A DNA stretch of 63,069 bases, filler included, from Octopus bimaculoides (lineage: Eukaryota), in NCBI RefSeq assembly GCF_001194135.2. It is 5 parts of 5 records of this genome, joined end to end, with 100 filler letters (N's around TTAATTAATTAA, not from the genome) between each part and the next. Parts side by side here need not be neighbours in the genome. Positions count along the whole stretch, not along the records: positions 25,784 to 51,819 come from NC_068987.1; 4 more parts are not named here. One strand, given 5' to 3'. Below are positions 29,548-50,156 of the stretch, piece after piece (positions within the stretch are counted from its first letter, which is position 1; each line of letters begins with the position of its first letter). The position numbers were made by a program, and so were the translations under genes. The notes beneath the pieces were generated by a model, which saw only the letters and a program-made list of their open reading frames with translations, did no database searches and was not told where the DNA came from.

Positions 29548-30200
29548 TCATCATCATCATCATCATTTAACATCCACTTTCCATGCTAGCATGGGTTGGA
29601 CGATTTGACTGAGGACTGGCAGACCAGATGGCTACACCAGACTCCAATCTGATTTGGCAGGGTTTCTACAGCTGGATGCCCTTCCTAACGCCAACCACTG
29701 AGAGTGTAGTGGGTGCTTTTACTTGCCACCAGCACGAAGGCCAGTCAGGTGGTACTGGCAACAGCCATGCTCAAAATGGTGTATTTTAGGTGCCACCTGC
29801 ACAGGAGCTAGTCCAGCGGCACTGGCAATGACCTCGCTCAATTGTCTTTTCATGTGCCACTGGCACAAGTGCCAGTAAGGCGGCACTGGTAATGATCACG
29901 CTCAAATGGTGCTATTTATGTGCCACTGGCACGGAAGCCAGACAGCTGCTCTGGCAACGATCACGCTCGGATGCTACTCTTAGCACTCCACTGGTACAGG
30001 TGCCATCATGATTTCGCTTTCACGTGCCCCAACAGGTCTTCACAAGCCGAGTTTAGTGGCCAATGAAGGAGACGTTGGCATGGGTGCCAGTCATCGAATT
30101 TGGTTCGATTTCAATTTCACTTGCCTCAACAGGTCTTCGCAAGTGGAGTTTAGTGTCCAATGAAGGAAAGGTACGCATAAATGGGCTGGCTACACCCAAC
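29548..30200 (-). mobile_element. 3' UTR of the same RTE LINE family, with ~60-bp subrepeats; upstream of the visible macroH2A exons (presumed intron)
   Basis: Seen: (CAT)n followed by ttaacatccactttccatgctagcatgggttggac...cagctggatgcccttcctaacgccaaccac, shared with 39890-40200 and 49905-50156. Confidence 0.85.
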
Positions 30201-30551: not shown

Positions 30552-30718
<167 letters not shown>

Positions 30719-32857: not shown

Positions 32858-33073
<216 letters not shown>

Positions 33074-38860: not shown

Positions 38861-41380
38861 TTTTTAAAAAATTACTAATATTTCTTAAAAGTATCTCTTT
38901 AAAAAATATACTAAAACGAATTTTGTTGCACTTCTTTTAAATTTGTCACTTTTAGTTTACAATGTATCTACATACTATGCTACACACTACTATATTCCTT
39001 AAAATTAAAGAGACTGAATTCGGTCAAGAAATTGCCAGTAGATTGAGGTCATTGCCAATAGTCAATCGCTAATATCAAATTACATTGAATATAATGAAAA
39101 AAATTTGCGGAATAGATATACAGTATATAGGTTGAATTCATCTAAGTTTAACCACTTAAATAGTCATTTCAGCTAAGTCATCATTTATTATTACTTTTCT
39201 TTGAATAATTATTTTTACTATTTTTATTTATGTTTAATTAAGCAAATTCTACTGTTTACATCAAGATTAGATAAACTTTTTTTTTGTAATGATTATGATT
39301 GTAAATGTATATTTTGAAATAAGGAGTAGAAGAGTGAAGTGAGTTCATATGAAGACTTGCACTATTCACCTTTGAGCGGGCTGCTTCCTTTTCAAACTGA
39401 TTTGATCTACATATATATGCATATAAAAAATAGCAATATGTACACTTATTTTTATGCAATTAAATTATACAGGCTTCTTTTATTTTATTAACTTTTAGTT
39501 TACTCTATGTAATATATGCTATATAAATTGAACTCAAAATGGACAGCCCACTCATTTTGGGTAAATTTTAGTCATTTTAGACTGTTTAACTTTACCTTTC
39601 TGCCCAATTTATGTTGTATGTATATTATTACTGATACTTTATTACTACTTTATAATTTTAATTATATTTTTAAATTAATTATTATTTTAATTATAATGCT
39701 CTAGTTTTTTTGATAACAATAATATTGCGCTGCAACTTTCAAAATTGAAATAATAAATTGAAATAGTTACAAAGATTTAAATGAATTAATTATAATATAA
39801 ATGAAATAAAAAATAATAAATATTTTTATCACTGTTAATAATTTGCAAGTAAAAATCTTTTTTCTGCTTGATAATTTCTATACATCATCATCATCGTTTA
39901 ATGCCTGTTTTCCATGCTGGCATGGGTTAGACAGTTCAACTGGGATCTGGGAAGCCAGGAGGCTGCATGAGGCCCCAATCTGATCTGGCACTGTTTTTAC
40001 AGCTGGATGCCCTTCCTAACACTAACCATTCCGAGAGTGTAGTGGGTGCTTTTTACATGCCACCGGCACGAGGGGCCAGAGGAGCTGGCATTGACCACAA
40101 TCGGATAGTGCTTTTTATGTGCCATCAGCACGGAAGCCAGTCAAGGCGGCACTGGCATCAGCCACGTTCGGATGGTGCTTTTCACATGTTACTGGCATGA
40201 GGCTCACAACTACAATTTCCATTTGATTTGATTTTGATATTGCTGATGCTGATGTACTTGGCTCAATAGGTCTCCTCAAGCATTGTATGTCGCTCCACGA
40301 TCCAAGGTACTTTTGAGTGGGCTGGTTATGCGACACTGGTGTAGGTTACAGCTGTGGACTCACTTTATTTGCCGGGTCTTCTCAGTCACAGCATACTTCC
40401 AGAGGTCTTGGTCTTTTGTCATTGCCTCTGTGAGGCCCAATGTTCAATGGTCATGCTTCACCACCTCATCCCATGTGTTCCTGAGTCTCTACCCTGGATT
40501 CCTTCCACTGTTTGGGAATGGCACTTCTTCACACAGCTCTCTTCGTCCATCCACAGTACATGACCATACCAATGCAAACGTCTCTCTTGTATGCCACATC
40601 CAATGCTTCTTATGGCTAACATTTCTCTCAGGGTGCTTACACTCTGTCATGTGTGCACACTGACATTACACATCCAGCGGATCATGCTAGTTTCATTTCT
40701 TTCAAGCCTACGCATGTCTCCAGCAGTCACAGCCCATGTTTCACTGTCGTGAAGCATGGCAGTTCACACACATGCATCATACAATCTACCTTTCACTCTG
40801 ATCAGGAGGCCCTTCGTCACCAGTAGGGGTAGAAGCTTTCTGAACTTTGCCCAGGCTATTCTTATTCTAGTGGTAACACTCTCTGAGCATCCACCCCCAC
40901 TACAGACTTGGTCACCTAGGTAGCAGAAGCTATCAACTACTTCTAGTTTCTCCCCCGGGCATGTGATGGAGTCTGTTTTCTGAGCATCTGTGGTGTTTAT
41001 TGCCCCTGTGCATCTGCTGCATGTGAAAGCTATCTTCCCGGTTAATCTTCCTTTGATGTTGCTGCACCTCTTATGTGTCCATAGCTTACACTGGGAATAT
41101 CTTATGGAATTTCTACCTACACCTTTTCTACAGATCAAGCAGGGCCACCTACCTGAAGGGGTGTTGCAATTCTTAATCTTTGATCAAATGGTTTTTGTCG
41201 TTTTGTTGTAACAGTAGTTACTTACCATCTTTTTTCTGCCTTAAAATATTCATTAGTTTTGTATGGATTTAAGATTAAAATTATAAACGATTTTAAATTT
41301 TAAAAAAAGTGCAACAAAATGCGTTTTAGAAAAATTTTTTTAAGAAATACTTTCAAGAAATATTAGTAATTTTTTTAAAG
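38861..41380. repeat. ~85-bp inverted repeat pair (38861-38944 and 41295-41380)
   Basis: Seen: ttttaaaaaattactaatatttcttaaaagtatctctttaaaaaatatactaaaacgaattttgttgcacttctttta versus the minus strand of 41295-41380, tttaaaaaaattactaatatttcttgaaagtatttcttaaaaaaatttttctaaaacgcattttgttgcactttttt. Confidence 0.85.
39885..41157 (-). mobile_element. RTE-clade LINE, 5'-truncated: end of ORF with Zn-finger-like insert, long 3' UTR, (ATG)n tail
   Basis: Seen: PCLICRKGVGRNSIRYSQCKLWTHKRC...FTCSRC...LEVVDSFCYLGD...RIRIAWAKFR...RLYDACV, then SETWAVT..MRRLERNE, RRLHWYGHV, and a (CAT)n tail on + at 39883-39895. Known: RTE RT thumb/C-terminal motifs. Confidence 0.9.
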
Positions 41381-41700
41381 AAATACCTACTTGTTTCTTT
41401 CTTTTTAAAGTTTAATATTGGTTGATATTTTTTCAATAGAGCATTTTGTTGAATTCTTTTTTTGTTTTTCAAGAAATATTTTTCCCATAAAATTTCTTCC
41501 TTTTTGAGATTATATTTTTTAAGCATTAAATTTTCATCAAGAAAATGCATCGTTAGCCCATTATCATATGCTTTACACCCACATACCGTGGTGAGGTGAT
41601 GGTTGGATTTAATGGGGGAAAGGCCACCAAATATTTAGTTTATCAGATAAAGAAATGCAATTTCATATCTTTTAATTCATTCAATTTTTTTTTAATTTGA

Positions 41701-42066
41701 TTAAATACGTTCAAAAAATAAGGCAACAATATTATTCATTTTAGAAACGAAATTGACATTATATGCAGTAAATTGAATGTCACTAATAATATTCCATTTG
41801 TCATTATTTTTAACTATGCAAGTATAATGACCGCTATTGACTTGATTCAATGTATGCATTATGCAAGTTTTTAATTTGAAATTAGTGCCAAAAATATTTT
41901 GCTCTTTGGTATTAAAATATGTGATTTCTACATTAATTTTTCTGACAATAACATTATCATTATCATATGAAAATCTATTCAGAGAAACACATAAATATGA
42001 TGTATTGCTACCACTGCCTCCTCCTCTGTTGCTGCTTTTAGCAACCCTTGAATATGTTAGTGTCAT
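41701..42066 (-). pseudogene. C-terminal half of a ubiquitin-specific protease (peptidase C19/UCH)-like domain; intronless, 5'-truncated
   Basis: Seen: YLCVSLNRFSY...RKIN...FKLKTCIMHTLNQVNSGHYTCIVKNNDKWNIISD...IVALFFERI*. Known: USP box 4 (LxxxLKRF), His box (H..SGHY....W...D) and terminal YxLFYER. No Cys box and no good splice acceptor are visible upstream. Confidence 0.7.
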
Positions 42067-43711: not shown

Positions 43712-44290
43712 TATAAGGTGTGTTCAAAACTAATGCCATATGGACAAAATCCTTTGGTTGGGAAGTGATGCCACTCTTCCTGCACATGTGTAAAAACGTT
43801 CATACTGGTAGGCCATGTCAGTTCCCAGCTGTTATGTTTAGAGTACAGATGTGTAGTGCATGCTTGTTGGATTTTCGTTTTTCATGCAAGATGAAGTCTG
43901 GGTCATGGTTTGCACATTCCAGCATGTCCTGAGTGAATTCTATGCGGAGTTGCCAGCACCTTTGGCACAAATTTCACCAACACTCTCTGCATGCACAAAT
44001 CCTCTGTTAAAATGGAATGCACTGGTCCTGTGCTCATTCCTACTTCATGAGAAATTTCCTGAGTTGTTACACAATGGTCCACCATGACTATTTGCCAAAC
44101 CTTCTCAATTGGCTCCTCATCTCAGCTTGTGGATGACCTGCCTGAGCATGTTTCACTCTCCACTGAAATGTGGCAATGTTTAAAGCATTTGTTCTCCTTG
44201 GTCAGAGTTTTACCCATAGAGTTTTATCATTACCAAAGCATGCTGAATCTTCTGAATAGTTTGTACTTGAGTATCACAAAGTTTTTGGCA
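43712..44290 (-). mobile_element. mariner-like transposon remnant
   Basis: Seen: DHCVTTQEISHEVGMSTGPVHSILTEDLCMQRVLVKFVPKVL, a decayed GRSSTS upstream, and TIR-like TATAAGGTGTGTTCAAAA at ~43712. Confidence 0.8.
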
Positions 44291-45448: not shown

Positions 45449-45580
45449 CCACTCACAAAGCTTTGGTCAGCCCAAGGCTATAGTAGAAGACACTTGCCCA
45501 AGGTGCCATGCAGTGGGACTGAACCTGGAACCATGTGGTTCATAAGCAAGCTACTTACCACACAGCCACTCCTATGCCTA
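45449..45580 (-). mobile_element. CORE-type SINE 5' half, CpG-depleted
   Basis: Seen: ccactcacaaagctttggtcagcccaaggct...gccatgcagtgggactgaacctggaacc. Confidence 0.85.
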
Positions 45581-45768
45581 CTACATTAGTATAATTTTAC
45601 CTAAAATCTCCAAGAAGGTAAGGAGATAGACAGAGAACATGCTGCCTTCACTTCAGCTTAGAAGCTACTAAGGTATCAGGAAGAAAGACTTGTTACAGAT
45701 TTTGCTTGTCACTGTTTTATGGGGTCAGTTTTAATTTATAGACTAGTTTATCAAATCTTTGTATATAT

Positions 45769-48540
45769 ATGTGGCTACTAATCCATAGAACAAATGAGTT
45801 TGTTCGAAAGATGAGGTGGATTGCTTACCATCATAAGACTAAGAAGAAAAATGGAACTCTAGAAACATATGAGAAAAGTTATTATAAGAAGATATTCAAA
45901 AGTAGAAAAAATCCTCCACCTAGTCCCCTACTGGAAAATTTTGAAAAAGACTTATTTGATCTAATAGCTAATGTAAAATTCAAGGAACACCCTCTCAGAA
46001 AAAACTTACATCTGAGGAAACTAAAGGAATTTATTAAGTTATTGCATAACAAACCAGGCATTCTGATCCCAGCAGATAAAACCGGAAACTTATATAGACT
46101 TGACTATACCACCTATAGGAAACTTGTAATGAAGGAACTTAATGCTAAATATAAAATAACATCTAAAAAGAATCTATTAGACATCAATTTGAAAATCAAG
46201 GAAGTTATGTTAGAATACGACTTGGCAGACAGAACAGAACCCTTAAAACCAAGTGAAGCTAGGATTAACCTAAAGGACCATAAGAAGAACTTCCATGATA
46301 ATCATACTGCAAGGCTAATTTGTCCGACTAAGTCTGATATTGGTTGGCTTAGCAAGTCTATTCCAGACAATATCCTACTCCTTATAATTCCCAACCTAAC
46401 ACTAAAATTATGGATTGATACAGATGAGGTAATACATTGGTTTAAATCTATTGATAACATAAGTAATTATTCTTTTATCCAATTTGATATTAATAGTTAT
46501 TATTCCAGTATATCTCTTATTCTTCTGAACAAGTCTCTTATTTTTGCAAAAAACCTCTCTCATATAACTAGGGATAAAATTGACATTATTCTTTTTGCTA
46601 CAAGAACTATTATAGAATTTGAGGGTAAACTTTGGACTAGGGCTGACACCCTCGAAAACTTTGATATAGCTATGGGCTCAAGTGACTCGGCCAAAATCAC
46701 AAATCTAGTGGATGCATACCTTTTAAGGTGCCAAAATAGAGAAATCCCTGAATTACAGGGAGGTTTCTATTGGGATGATGCTCTGTTCATTATCCCTAGC
46801 AACAATAAACAATCATAGAAAGAATGAGGAAAAGAATTAGAAAATTTTCCAAAAACTTTAAGTATTACGTATGAATATGGCACAAAGGTAGTAAATTTTT
46901 TGGATACTACTTTAGGCGTTAACTCTAGATTATACTCCCCTATAGGAAACAAGGTGAGGTTACAAGATATGTGAACAAATTATCAAATCACTCCCGTAAT
47001 GTATTAAAATCGGTAGTTAAAAGTATTTCTAGGAGAATTACGAAATTATCATCAAACATTGATATTTTTAATTCCCATTCATACTACTACAATGTTGCCT
47101 TGTCTAAGGCAGGATATGACCAGGGAATTACTTTTCTTAGTCCTGTAAGTTCAGCACCATTTAATAGAGGAAAAAATGATAGCTTCAGTAATAGAAAGTC
47201 TACTAACTTACTTAGTTGTAAAAAAATACCAAATGATAAAACTTCCTACAAACCTAACATTTTAAATAATAATAGAGTTTGCTTCAATAGGAGACAGAAT
47301 ACTAAAAAGAGTATGAAGCTTAGGTTAGATAAAAAAAAAGATGACAATGTGAAAGAAATGGTTACTCCTCCAGATATGGAATCTACTAGAAATATAATCA
47401 AAACTATTAATCAAGGCACGATTCTAAGGAGCAGGGATAGTACAAATATATCCCGCCCTTACTTACACCATAAATTTAAAGGTAAGAATTTCATCTGGTT
47501 CAATATCCCATCCAACCGTGCATTATCCACAAACACATATAGAAAATTTATGGCTATTTTAGAAAAAAACTTCTCTACTTCCCATAGATGTAATAGAATC
47601 TTTTCATGTAAGACAGTTAGAATCTCATACACTACTCTTCCCAATATGGGTACCATTATAGCTAGATTAAATAAGAAGAATATAGAATTAGCCAGAATTG
47701 TTAATAATAATAATTATTATTATTATTATTATAATATTAGTAACAATGGCAATAATAACAATAATAATAATAATAAAAATAAATATAATAATAATATTAA
47801 TAATAATAATAATAATAATAGTACTGTGAACTATAACGTAAACCCCCAACGTGAGAATAGTAGTATTGATGATGATGTGATAGTGGTAGAACTTCAAATA
47901 TAAACAGTATGGATTTTAGTTCCGGTGCCCATACGGACATGGAAATTATTGATATGCCTGCTGATGTAGAGGTGGTTTTAAATGATACTACAATTAAAGT
48001 GGGGTTAGAAAATAACAGACATGAACATAACATACTTGATAACAGTAATATTAATAGCGAAAATATTAATAATAATAATAATAATAATAATTTGAATCTT
48101 AATAATAATAATATTAATAATAATAATATTAATGATAATAGTTGCAATTGTAGAGTTAAATCTCACTATCCGTTATTAGGCCATTGTCTTACCCAGAACG
48201 TAATATATAAATGTTCAATAAAAACTACAACTAATAATTTTATATATATCGTTGTTCGATAAATATGAAACAGCATCTAACCAACCACATGTCGTCCTTT
48301 AAACTTAAACATAAAGTGAATTGTACGTCATTATCCAGTAAGATTTGGAAATTAAAGGAAAGTGGAATTGGGTTTAGCCTCAAATGGGAAATAATAAGAA
48401 AAGCACAGCCTTATAGAAATAGCAGATATGGGTGTGAGCTGTGCTCTATGGAAACATGAAATTTTTAAGCAAAAAGATAAAGGCAACCGGATTAATAATC
48501 GATTAGACCTTAGGATATCATATGTACATAGTGTCACCCA
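45769..48540 (+). mobile_element. Penelope-like retroelement (RT plus C-terminal GIY-YIG endonuclease; Neptune/Nematis-type order), near full-length, frameshifted
   Basis: Seen: RKMRWIAY, IPADKTGNLY, FDINSYYSSIS, MGSSDSAKITNLV, GGFYWDD, VNFLDTTL, SNHSRN, IWFN..., SYTTLPN, then CNC...PLLGHCLTQNVIYK...NHMSSFK...TSLSSKIWKLK...WEII...CELC. These lie in three ORF pieces in different frames. Known: these are PLE RT and GIY-YIG motifs; the clade assignment is tentative. Confidence 0.9.
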
Positions 48541-49670: not shown

Positions 49671-49904
49671 CCTTTATTAAATATCAGTAAAATCCAATTG
49701 ATCAATCTCCATAGATAGCATCTAATAAGTTAATATATGGGTAAATAATTTGTATAAATATGAAACTATTTCTATGTAATTTCTTTTCCTTCCTCTATTG
49801 TGGTAAAATTTGGTATATACTCAATAGTATTCGAATGAAATTTTATCCTTCTGTTATAATATCATTCTTAATAATACATGTATATACATATATGTATATA
49901 TATG

Positions 49905-50156
49905 CCAGTGCCGCTTGACCAGCTCCTGTGCAGGTGGCACATAAAAAAACACCATTTGAGCGTGGCTGTTGCCAGTACCACCTGACTGGCCCTCATGTTG
50001 GTGGCATGTAAAAGCACCCACTACACTCTCGGAGTGGTTGGCATTAGGAAGGGCATCCAGCTGTAGAAACTCTGCCAGATCAGATTGGAACCTAGTGCAG
50101 CCATCTGGTTCGCCAGTCCTCAGTCAAATTGTCCAACCCATGCCAGCATGGGAAGC
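49905..50156 (+). mobile_element. RTE LINE 3' UTR fragment (same family)
   Basis: Seen: reverse complement of the 29548-29800 sequence; ends ccaacccatgccagcatggg at a gap. Confidence 0.85.

What the first reader, a model, noticed from the sequence alone, without database searches (positions are those of the whole stretch)
41701..42066. Orphan, intronless deubiquitinase (USP/C19) half-domain in a very AT-rich island
Seen: ~100 stop-free codons on minus carry USP box 4 (LCVSLNRFSY), a compact His box (IMHTLNQVNSGHYTCIVKNNDKWNIISD) and a natural end (VALFFERI*). Third positions are nearly all A/T, unlike the nearby macroH2A exons. Similarity stops abruptly at a degenerate trinucleotide run (~42005-42040), and there is no polypyrimidine acceptor. 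Known: host USPs usually have large insertions and HxG in the His box, whereas large DNA viruses and some transposons carry minimal ubiquitin/SUMO proteases. Inference: cargo of an undescribed mobile element or endogenous virus, or a 5'-truncated retrocopy.
Basis: partly seen in the sequence, partly recalled or inferred. Interest (0 to 1): 0.78.

Follow-up and report, generated by a model that had tools for sequence, protein, structure and literature searches.

The report
Dead Helitron-type transposon deubiquitinase fragment
The orphan half of a deubiquitinase gene is real, but it is a dead, 5'-truncated tail of a rolling-circle (Helitron-like) transposon gene that ends in a ubiquitin-protease domain, a kind of cargo already described in 2024, so it is ordinary genome debris and not a new virus or host gene.

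Summary
Window 41701-42066 (-) is a 121-codon ORF. Its last ~100 codons (42003-41704) are the C-terminal half of a USP/UCH (C19) domain, with the His box and Asp present and no Cys box (Pfam UCH 31 bits, above the 23.9 cut-off). No other part of a USP, helicase or Rep gene lies in the piece.

An exhaustive HMMER search places it in a family of compact (~285 aa) USP domains. On four independent contigs, one from Octopus bimaculoides, this domain is fused in frame behind the C-terminal Pif1-type helicase domains. On three of them a Helitron Rep gene (Helitron_like_N, twice with DUF6570) lies upstream. A profile of that family built without the window scores the fragment at 88.6 bits. The same segments of cellular-type USPs score 25-50 bits.

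A second truncated copy (L007/L008) is ~71% identical in DNA through the coding part, and weaker similarity continues through ~400 nt of 3' non-coding sequence. That excludes a retrocopy poly(A).

UCH domains in group-2 Helitron-like elements (HLE2) were reported by HELIANO (NAR 2024). Verdict: a non-functional 3' fragment of such an element, lying about 8.6 kb downstream of a macro-domain host gene. It is a new (cephalopod) member of a known kind, of low interest. One loose end remains: several copies are 5'-truncated at nearly the same place.

The parts
41704..42003 (-). C-terminal half of a USP/UCH (C19) domain, about 100 codons. It keeps the His box (…SGHYTC…) and the Asp (…ISD…) and ends two residues after the family's terminal …LF.E.. 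motif. This is the only part homologous to the Helitron-linked USP family.
   Evidence: Pfam UCH 31 bits. Family HMM built without the window: 88.6 bits, HMM positions 209-305. tblastn with 33 relatives always starts at 41994-42003 and ends at 41704. It is the only hit in a six-frame hmmsearch --max of the piece.
41701..42066 (-). The mechanical ORF (121 aa plus stop). Its first ~20 codons (42004-42066) have no homologue. They include the purine-rich triplet-like run and an ATG that is probably fortuitous.
   Evidence: the HMM alignment starts at ORF residue 20; TRF negative
41293..41700 (-). 3' non-coding part of the element, conserved with the copy on L007/L008. Its probable 3' end is a T-run after …GTTGCAC, at about 41293-41300, where three copies lose similarity together.
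   Evidence: blastn and local alignment with L007; alignment with the second window copy. No terminal hairpin was found, so the end point is inferred, not shown.
38862..38944 (+). A second, isolated copy of the last ~85 nt of that 3' non-coding part, 88% identical, in the opposite orientation and 2.4 kb away.
   Evidence: self-blastn, alignment A3

Best explanation
The ORF is a dead, 5'-truncated 3' fragment of an autonomous Helitron-like rolling-circle transposon of the HLE2 group (Helitron2/Helentron). Its Rep/helicase protein ends in a compact USP-type deubiquitinase domain. About 0.7 kb of the element survives here: the last ~100 codons of the USP domain, the stop codon and ~400 nt of 3' non-coding sequence.

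The fragment lacks the Cys-box half of the protease, the helicase and the Rep nuclease. It can therefore neither cleave ubiquitin nor move.

Shown:
- USP homology limited to the C-terminal half.
- Membership of the helicase-fused USP family.
- Absence of every other part of the element from the piece.
- Existence of other truncated copies that share the 3' non-coding sequence.

Inferred:
- Intact elements use the domain as an active deubiquitinase. The catalytic Cys, His and Asp are kept in 9, 10 and 10 of 10 full-length relatives.
- By analogy with the OTU and VTD domains of other Helitron-like elements, it may protect transposition proteins from ubiquitin-dependent turnover or alter host ubiquitin signalling.
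- The exact 3' end of the fragment.
- How the 5' part was lost.
For: 1. Pfam UCH above its cut-off, C-terminal half only.

2. Exhaustive HMMER over 1.84 billion representatives gave 33 hits. The best full-context one is P0004, Octopus bimaculoides LOC128249111, 49% identical.

3. In O. bimaculoides (L001) one ORF carries UvrD_C_2 (E=6.4e-7) followed by UCH (E=5.8e-7).

4. P0035, P0036 and P0037 carry Pif1_2B + UvrD_C_2 + UCH in one ORF. They lie downstream of ORFs with DUF6570 + Helitron_like_N (L002, L003) or Helitron_like_N + PIF1 (L010).

5. An HMM of ten family members built without the window scores the fragment at 88.6 bits. With every sequence cut to the same C-terminal segment, the fragment scores 85.6 bits, other family fragments not in the model mostly 64-107, and cellular-type USPs 25-50. 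An NJ tree puts the fragment beside the compact, helicase-linked clade.

6. The copy on L007/L008 is 71% identical in DNA over 41907-41685. Similarity continues through the non-coding sequence to about 41300. An 88%-identical 84-nt copy of the tail lies at 38862-38944.

7. dN/dS between the window and L007 is 0.28 over 64 codons. Most of the divergence therefore arose while the gene was under selection, as expected for copies from different lineages of an active element.

8. UCH is listed among the domains stably carried by HLE2 elements, and DUF6570 is described as an HLE2 marker (PMC11417382).

9. The fragment lies ~8.6 kb downstream of the stop codon of the nearest host gene (macro domain), on the other strand, among other transposon debris.
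Against: - No Rep or helicase sequence is physically linked to the fragment in the window. The Helitron assignment rests on relatives that are 26-49% identical in protein.
- The hallmark HLE2 ends could not be shown. The 3' stretch does not fold better than shuffles (z=+1.6).
- Three copies (window, L009, L007/8) lack everything 5' of the last ~70-100 codons, and two begin at almost the same codon. Rolling-circle transposition starting from the 5' end does not predict this.
- One cellular-type USP (P0003) scores as high as P0004 in the pairwise search.
- The NJ tree has no support values.
Confidence: 0.8

Rival explanations
1. It is the last coding exon of a host USP gene, possibly one domesticated from a transposon. 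The Cys-box exons would lie beyond a long intron, outside the piece.
For: The ORF is intact and longer than chance allows (5 of 2000 shuffles). It keeps the His and Asp residues. AG dinucleotides and a CTAAC lie just upstream of the start of homology. The L009 copy has …TTTTCAG|G at the equivalent junction, and its homology starts at the same domain position. Cephalopod introns can be long (own knowledge).
Against: No USP-like exon was found in the 9.8 kb upstream, even with hmmsearch --max. That stretch holds other transposon debris, including an element on the opposite strand. The O. bimaculoides relative has no intron at that position and is fused to a helicase tail. The closest DNA-level relative (L007) is itself truncated further, has one frameshift and lies next to a retroelement-type gene. 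The family profile fits the fragment far better than it fits the same segment of cellular-type USPs.
Confidence: 0.07
2. It is a 5'-truncated processed retrocopy of a USP mRNA, made by LINE machinery, with the A-run after the stop as its poly(A) tail.
For: A run of nine A lies 12 nt after the stop, preceded by an AATTAAA-like motif. The copies are 5'-truncated with a shared 3' part, which is the pattern LINE-mediated copying gives. A LINE-like tail lies next to it.
Against: Similarity to L007/L008 continues for ~400 nt past the A-run at about the same identity as in the coding part, and L007 has no A-run there. No target-site duplication was seen. The nearest relatives are helicase-fused, not cellular USP mRNAs.
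Confidence: 0.03
3. It is a remnant of an endogenous large DNA virus, or of another undescribed element that carries a minimal deubiquitinase as cargo.
For: The composition is very AT-rich and the USP is compact and insertion-free. Another AT-rich, Asn-rich multi-ORF element lies 3.7 kb away.
Against: No relative was found in 50,697 phage records or 2.9 million viral contigs, with either the protein or a family alignment. No capsid, polB, integrase or packaging gene lies nearby. All relatives with genomic context are linked to Helitron Rep/helicase genes. The neighbouring AT-rich element is on the other strand, is separated by other debris and shares no sequence with the fragment.
Confidence: 0.03

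Closest known systems
UCH-carrying HLE2 Helitron-like elements (Li, Gilbert, Peng & Pollet, HELIANO, NAR 2024; PMC11417382)
   Same: The association is the same: Helitron_like_N Rep + DUF6570 (their HLE2 marker) + Pif1 helicase + a Pfam UCH domain downstream of RepHel.
   Different: That paper found UCH enriched in HLE2 subgroups c and d, mostly from lungfish and axolotl, and counts UCH among the domains 'encoded in different ORFs'. In four contigs here, including an octopus one, the UCH domain is in frame with the helicase C-terminus. The window holds only a dead tail of such a gene.
Deubiquitinase domains of Helentrons/Helitrons: OTU and herpesvirus-tegument-like VTD domains (Erven et al., Nat Commun 2022, PMC9741609; Thomas et al., Mob DNA 2014, PMC4067079)
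   Same: Rolling-circle transposons repeatedly carry a cysteine-protease deubiquitinase. VTD domains of zebrafish elements cleave ubiquitin and NEDD8 conjugates in vitro. The likely role is the same.
   Different: The protease fold family differs (USP/C19, not OTU or VTD). No activity has been measured for the USP type. The domain sits at the C-terminus, where Helentrons carry an AP endonuclease.
Cellular USP12/USP46 and other compact USP catalytic domains
   Same: These are the best solved-structure matches of the family profile: USP12 and USP46 at E about 4e-16 to 2e-15, then USP15, a SAGA-type Ubp8 chain, USP8 and USP21. The Cys/His/Asp catalytic residues and the His-box motif are shared.
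   Different: The transposon family is shorter (~285 aa), ends immediately after the last strand, is fused to a helicase, and forms its own cluster. The window fragment has only the half with His and Asp.

Membership tests
USP/UCH deubiquitinase domain (peptidase C19, Pfam PF00443) | Profile match above the curated threshold | tested here: met
   31.0 bits against a cut-off of 23.9, E=2.5e-7, but only profile positions 150-240 of 254.
USP/UCH deubiquitinase domain (peptidase C19, Pfam PF00443) | His box with the catalytic His, and the downstream Asp/Asn | tested here: met
   The window's His (…SGHYTC…) and Asp (…ISD…) fall in columns that are invariant or nearly invariant in alignment A1. These columns are 10/10 in full-length relatives.
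USP/UCH deubiquitinase domain (peptidase C19, Pfam PF00443) | Cys box with the catalytic Cys (N-terminal half of the domain) | tested here: not met
   There is no match to HMM positions 1-208 anywhere in the piece (hmmsearch --max on the six frames; tblastn). The fragment cannot be an active enzyme.
Helitron-like element, HLE2 group (Helitron2/Helentron) | Rep (HUH nuclease, Helitron_like_N) and Pif1-type helicase in the element | tested here: not met
   Both are absent from the window. They are present next to or fused with the USP domain in relatives L001, L002, L003-5 and L010. The window is filed as a fragment derived from such an element, not as an element.
Helitron-like element, HLE2 group (Helitron2/Helentron) | DUF6570 in the Rep protein (the HLE2 marker according to PMC11417382) | tested here: inconclusive
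   Present in the Rep ORFs of L002 and L003. Not testable for the window or for the octopus copy, which lack Rep.
Helitron-like element, HLE2 group (Helitron2/Helentron) | Terminal structure: subterminal inverted repeats, 3' palindrome, T-run at the boundary, insertion at TT (PMC4067079) | tested here: inconclusive
   Three copies lose similarity together after a T-run at about 41293-41300. No palindrome was found (DNA fold -5.8 kcal/mol against -8.7±1.8 for shuffles; only A/T-only inverted repeats). The 5' end is missing, so subterminal repeats cannot be tested.
Helitron-like element, HLE2 group (Helitron2/Helentron) | Multiple dispersed copies | tested here: inconclusive
   Related copies exist on L001 (octopus), L007/L008 and L009, and an 84-nt tail copy lies within the window. 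No cephalopod genome could be searched, so the copy number is unknown.
Processed retrocopy | Poly(A) tail at the end of the copied unit | tested here: not met
   Homology with L007 runs ~400 nt past the A-run.

The most novel reading that the evidence does not exclude
The last ~100 codons of the USP domain plus the 3' non-coding tail may form a unit of their own. This could be a tail-only, non-autonomous derivative, or the product of an internal start site of rolling-circle copying. It would explain why the window and L009 copies begin at almost the same codon and why only tails were recovered. More broadly, the in-frame helicase-USP fusion could define an uncharacterised, catalytically intact deubiquitinase clade of Helitron-like elements that extends to cephalopods.
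Probability: 0.12. Interest if true: 0.4.

Novelty: new member of a known kind. Interest (0 to 1): 0.15.

Why it matters
As a locus it matters little. It is a dead transposon fragment and should be masked, not annotated as a host deubiquitinase or a viral gene.

It adds three minor points:
- UCH/USP-carrying Helitron-like elements, so far reported mainly from lungfish and axolotl, have left copies in octopus-type genomes.
- In the relatives retrieved here the USP domain is fused in frame to the helicase, not encoded by a separate ORF.
- This gives a third deubiquitinase fold (USP, besides OTU and VTD) recruited by rolling-circle transposons. That supports the idea that these elements benefit from removing ubiquitin from some target.

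Tried and rejected
- The word-indexed protein search with the ORF found nothing. Only the exhaustive HMMER search found relatives. Three of its 33 hits (P0008, P0021, P0025) are Ig or repeat proteins, i.e. chance matches.
- Phage tblastn and viral-contig scans with the protein and with a family alignment gave no relatives.
- Two metagenome-contig scans gave no confirmed relatives. One alignment was too diverse to use.
- Other element parts in the window were sought by tblastn with 38 proteins and with the Rep and Hel-USP ORFs of L002/L003, and by hmmsearch --max on six frames. Nothing was found.
- A Helitron 3' hairpin was sought with an inverted-repeat scan and a DNA fold. Neither was convincing.
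- No DNA similarity was found between the window's 3' region and L001 or L009.
- Exact look-ups of the window's ORFs in the protein collection did not find them, so the source assembly was not identified directly.
- The run accessions behind L007-L009 were not found in the literature, and the HELIANO supplements are not held. The host species of those copies is therefore unknown.
- An 'OTU-like' reading of the ORF next to the octopus copy is only sub-threshold (E=0.025) and is not claimed.
- The neighbouring AT-rich element (45769-48470) gave no Pfam or PDB match. A link to the USP fragment was considered and dropped: it is on the opposite strand, shares no sequence with the fragment, and other debris lies between them.

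Full report
**1. The observation**

On the minus strand, 41701-42066 is an ORF of 121 codons plus a stop.

Pfam UCH (PF00443) matches at E=2.5e-7, 31.0 bits, against a gathering cut-off of 23.9. Only ORF residues 24-104 match, and they cover profile positions 150-240 of 254. A PDB sequence search gives weak hits that are all USPs. The ORF is longer than local composition predicts: 5 of 2000 shuffles reach it.

The coding part has GC 0.24 (GC3 0.20). The piece as a whole has 0.334, so it is AT-rich within an already AT-rich region.

The purine-rich triplet-like run upstream of the homology is visible by eye but is not called by Tandem Repeats Finder. Several AG dinucleotides and a CTAAC lie there, so the absence of an acceptor site cannot be asserted from sequence.

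**2. What is, and is not, around it**

The family profile was run against all six frames of 25784-51819 with filters off. tblastn was run with 38 relatives and with complete Rep and helicase-USP ORFs. Both find only this one segment. There is no Cys-box half, no helicase and no Rep.

- Upstream in the gene's orientation lie a helix-turn-helix remnant (43906-44121, -) and an unrelated AT-rich multi-ORF element on the other strand (45769-48470).
- Downstream lies a retroelement-like tail with a weak PHD match (40764-41180, -).
- The nearest host gene is on the + strand. It has macro-domain exons at 30554-30718 and about 32900-33070, the latter ending in a stop (Pfam Macro E=1.8e-16).

The fragment therefore lies ~8.6 kb beyond that gene's stop codon, on the opposite strand, among transposon debris.

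**3. Relatives**

The word-indexed search found nothing. Exhaustive HMMER against 1.84 billion representatives gave 33 hits with E≤1e-3. Three of them are chance matches to Ig or repeat proteins.

The best hits are short fragments: P0001 (51% identity), P0002 (42%) and P0005 (57%). Next is P0004 (49%), which is Octopus bimaculoides LOC128249111 on chromosome record CM046601.1.

Many other hits are proteins of 280-400 aa in which the match is the extreme C-terminus. They end two or three residues after the same …LF.E.. motif as the window ORF.

**4. The family belongs to Helitron-type transposases**

P0004 and P0006 begin with a Pif1-helicase tail directly in front of the USP domain.

| Contig | Source | What it carries |
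|---|---|---|
| L001 | O. bimaculoides | One ORF (9791-11041) with UvrD_C_2 (E=6.4e-7) followed by UCH (E=5.8e-7) |
| L002 (P0036) | Metagenome/run assembly | Pif1_2B + UvrD_C_2 + UCH in one ORF, just downstream of an ORF with DUF6570 + Helitron_like_N |
| L003-5 (P0035) | Metagenome/run assemblies | Pif1_2B + UvrD_C_2 + UCH in one ORF, just downstream of an ORF with DUF6570 + Helitron_like_N |
| L010 (P0037) | Run assembly | Pif1_2B + UvrD_C_2 + UCH in one ORF, downstream of Helitron_like_N (2.1e-23) and PIF1 (4.6e-30) |

The helicase tail of the octopus ORF is 55% identical to that of L003. The octopus ORF aligns with the L002 ORF across helicase tail and USP together (E=1e-26).

**5. Does the window fragment belong to that family and not to a cellular USP?**

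I built an HMM from ten full-length members, leaving out the window and its closest fragments. It scores the window ORF at 88.6 bits over HMM positions 209-305, three times the Pfam score.

With every sequence cut to the same C-terminal segment:
- the window scores 85.6 bits;
- other family fragments not in the model mostly score 64-107 bits;
- cellular-type USPs score 25-50 bits.

A neighbour-joining tree of these segments puts the window with P0005 beside the compact, helicase-linked clade and apart from the cellular-type sequences. The tree has no support values.

In the ten full-length members the catalytic Cys, His and Asp are present in 9, 10 and 10 sequences. The domain is therefore probably active in intact elements. 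The family profile's best solved relatives are USP12 and USP46 (E about 4e-16 to 2e-15).

**6. Other copies and the extent of the fragment**

L007/L008 are two run assemblies of unknown species. They carry a copy 71% identical in DNA to 41907-41685. Similarity continues through the non-coding sequence to about 41300. This rules out the A-run 12 nt after the stop as a retrocopy poly(A).

That copy is truncated further at its 5' side, has one frameshift, has lost one His-box residue, and lies next to a retroelement-type gene (DUF7083).

The last ~85 nt of the window's tail recur at 38862-38944 (+) at 88% identity. All three copies lose similarity after …GTTGCAC plus a T-run, at about 41293-41300. 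I take this as the probable 3' end.

A T-run at the boundary fits what is described for Helentron-type elements (PMC4067079). The expected 3' palindrome is not there: the DNA fold is -5.8 kcal/mol against -8.7±1.8 for shuffles.

dN/dS between the window and L007 is 0.28 over 64 codons, with dS near saturation. This suggests that most of the divergence arose in functional lineages before the copies died.

**7. Comparison with what is known**

HELIANO (PMC11417382) lists UCH among 20 domains stably carried by Helitron-like elements. It finds UCH almost exclusively in HLE2, enriched in subgroups c and d (mostly lungfish and axolotl). It treats DUF6570 as an HLE2 marker.

The architecture I recovered matches this. 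There is one difference: that paper counts UCH among the domains in separate ORFs, whereas here it is in frame with the helicase in four contigs.

Helentrons and Helitrons are also known to carry OTU and VTD deubiquitinase domains. The VTD domains are active on ubiquitin and NEDD8 in vitro, and the authors suggest they protect proteins needed for transposition (PMC9741609). Helitrons are annotated in octopus genomes (PMC13282606). No paper held in the library linked UCH-bearing elements to cephalopods.

**8. Mechanism and verdict**

In an intact element the RepHel-USP protein would nick and unwind the element for rolling-circle transposition. The C-terminal USP would remove ubiquitin from some target. 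The first function is established knowledge for the family. The second is inferred from the conserved catalytic residues and from the OTU/VTD analogy.

The window copy keeps only the His/Asp half and the 3' tail. It is inert.

But the element is of a described type, it is not viral, and it is not a retrocopy.

**9. What remains unexplained**

The window, L009 and L007/8 all lack everything 5' of the last ~70-100 codons, although their contigs extend 0.5-10 kb further. The window and L009 begin within a few codons of each other.

Rolling-circle transposition from the 5' end does not predict this. The possibilities are independent deletions, a tail-only derivative, or an intron in some lineages. 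The octopus copy L001 has no intron there. A genome-wide census would decide.

Noticed in passing
window 30554-30718 (+) and ~32900-33070 (+): Two exons of a macro-domain host gene (macroH2A-like). The second ends in a stop codon. The joined exons give Pfam Macro E=1.8e-16. This is the nearest host gene, on the strand opposite to the USP fragment.
   Followed up: partly
window 45769-48470 (+): An AT-rich, Asn-rich element with reading frames of 349, 310 and 117 aa plus a further segment, interrupted at least three times. By eye it has reverse-transcriptase-like (…DD…) and CxC/GIY-YIG-like motifs, suggesting a Penelope-like retroelement. There is no Pfam or PDB match, so this is a lead only. 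It shares no sequence with the USP fragment.
   Followed up: partly
window 40764-41180 (-): A GC-richer ORF (124 aa) resembling the tail of a retroelement polyprotein, with a weak PHD-finger match (E=0.002-0.003). It abuts the 3' side of the Helitron-like fragment.
   Followed up: no
window 43906-44121 (-): A stop-interrupted helix-turn-helix remnant that looks like the N-terminus of a mariner-type transposase. Pfam gives only HTH_24 at E=0.02.
   Followed up: no
window 40000-40197; 49902-50063; 29669-29981: A short interspersed repeat, 70-80% identical between copies in both orientations. Similar peptide-like strings recur near 45450-45590 and 51252-51524, next to assembly gaps.
   Followed up: no
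L001 9377-9691 (+) (O. bimaculoides CM046601.1): The ORF just upstream of the helicase-USP ORF has a sub-threshold OTU match (E=0.025, 15.5 bits, C-terminal part of the profile). The octopus helicase-USP copy itself is truncated at both ends and lacks the catalytic Cys.
   Followed up: partly
window ~42003; L009 ~475-499; L007 ~1245-1253: The truncated USP tails begin at nearly the same domain position in the window and L009, and ~32 codons later in L007. L009 has a duplicated TG/TA-rich stretch and …TTTTCAG|G at the junction.
   Followed up: partly
L002, L003-L005, L010: In these contigs the UCH domain is in the same ORF as the helicase C-terminus. The HELIANO paper lists UCH among domains encoded in separate ORFs.
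   Followed up: partly
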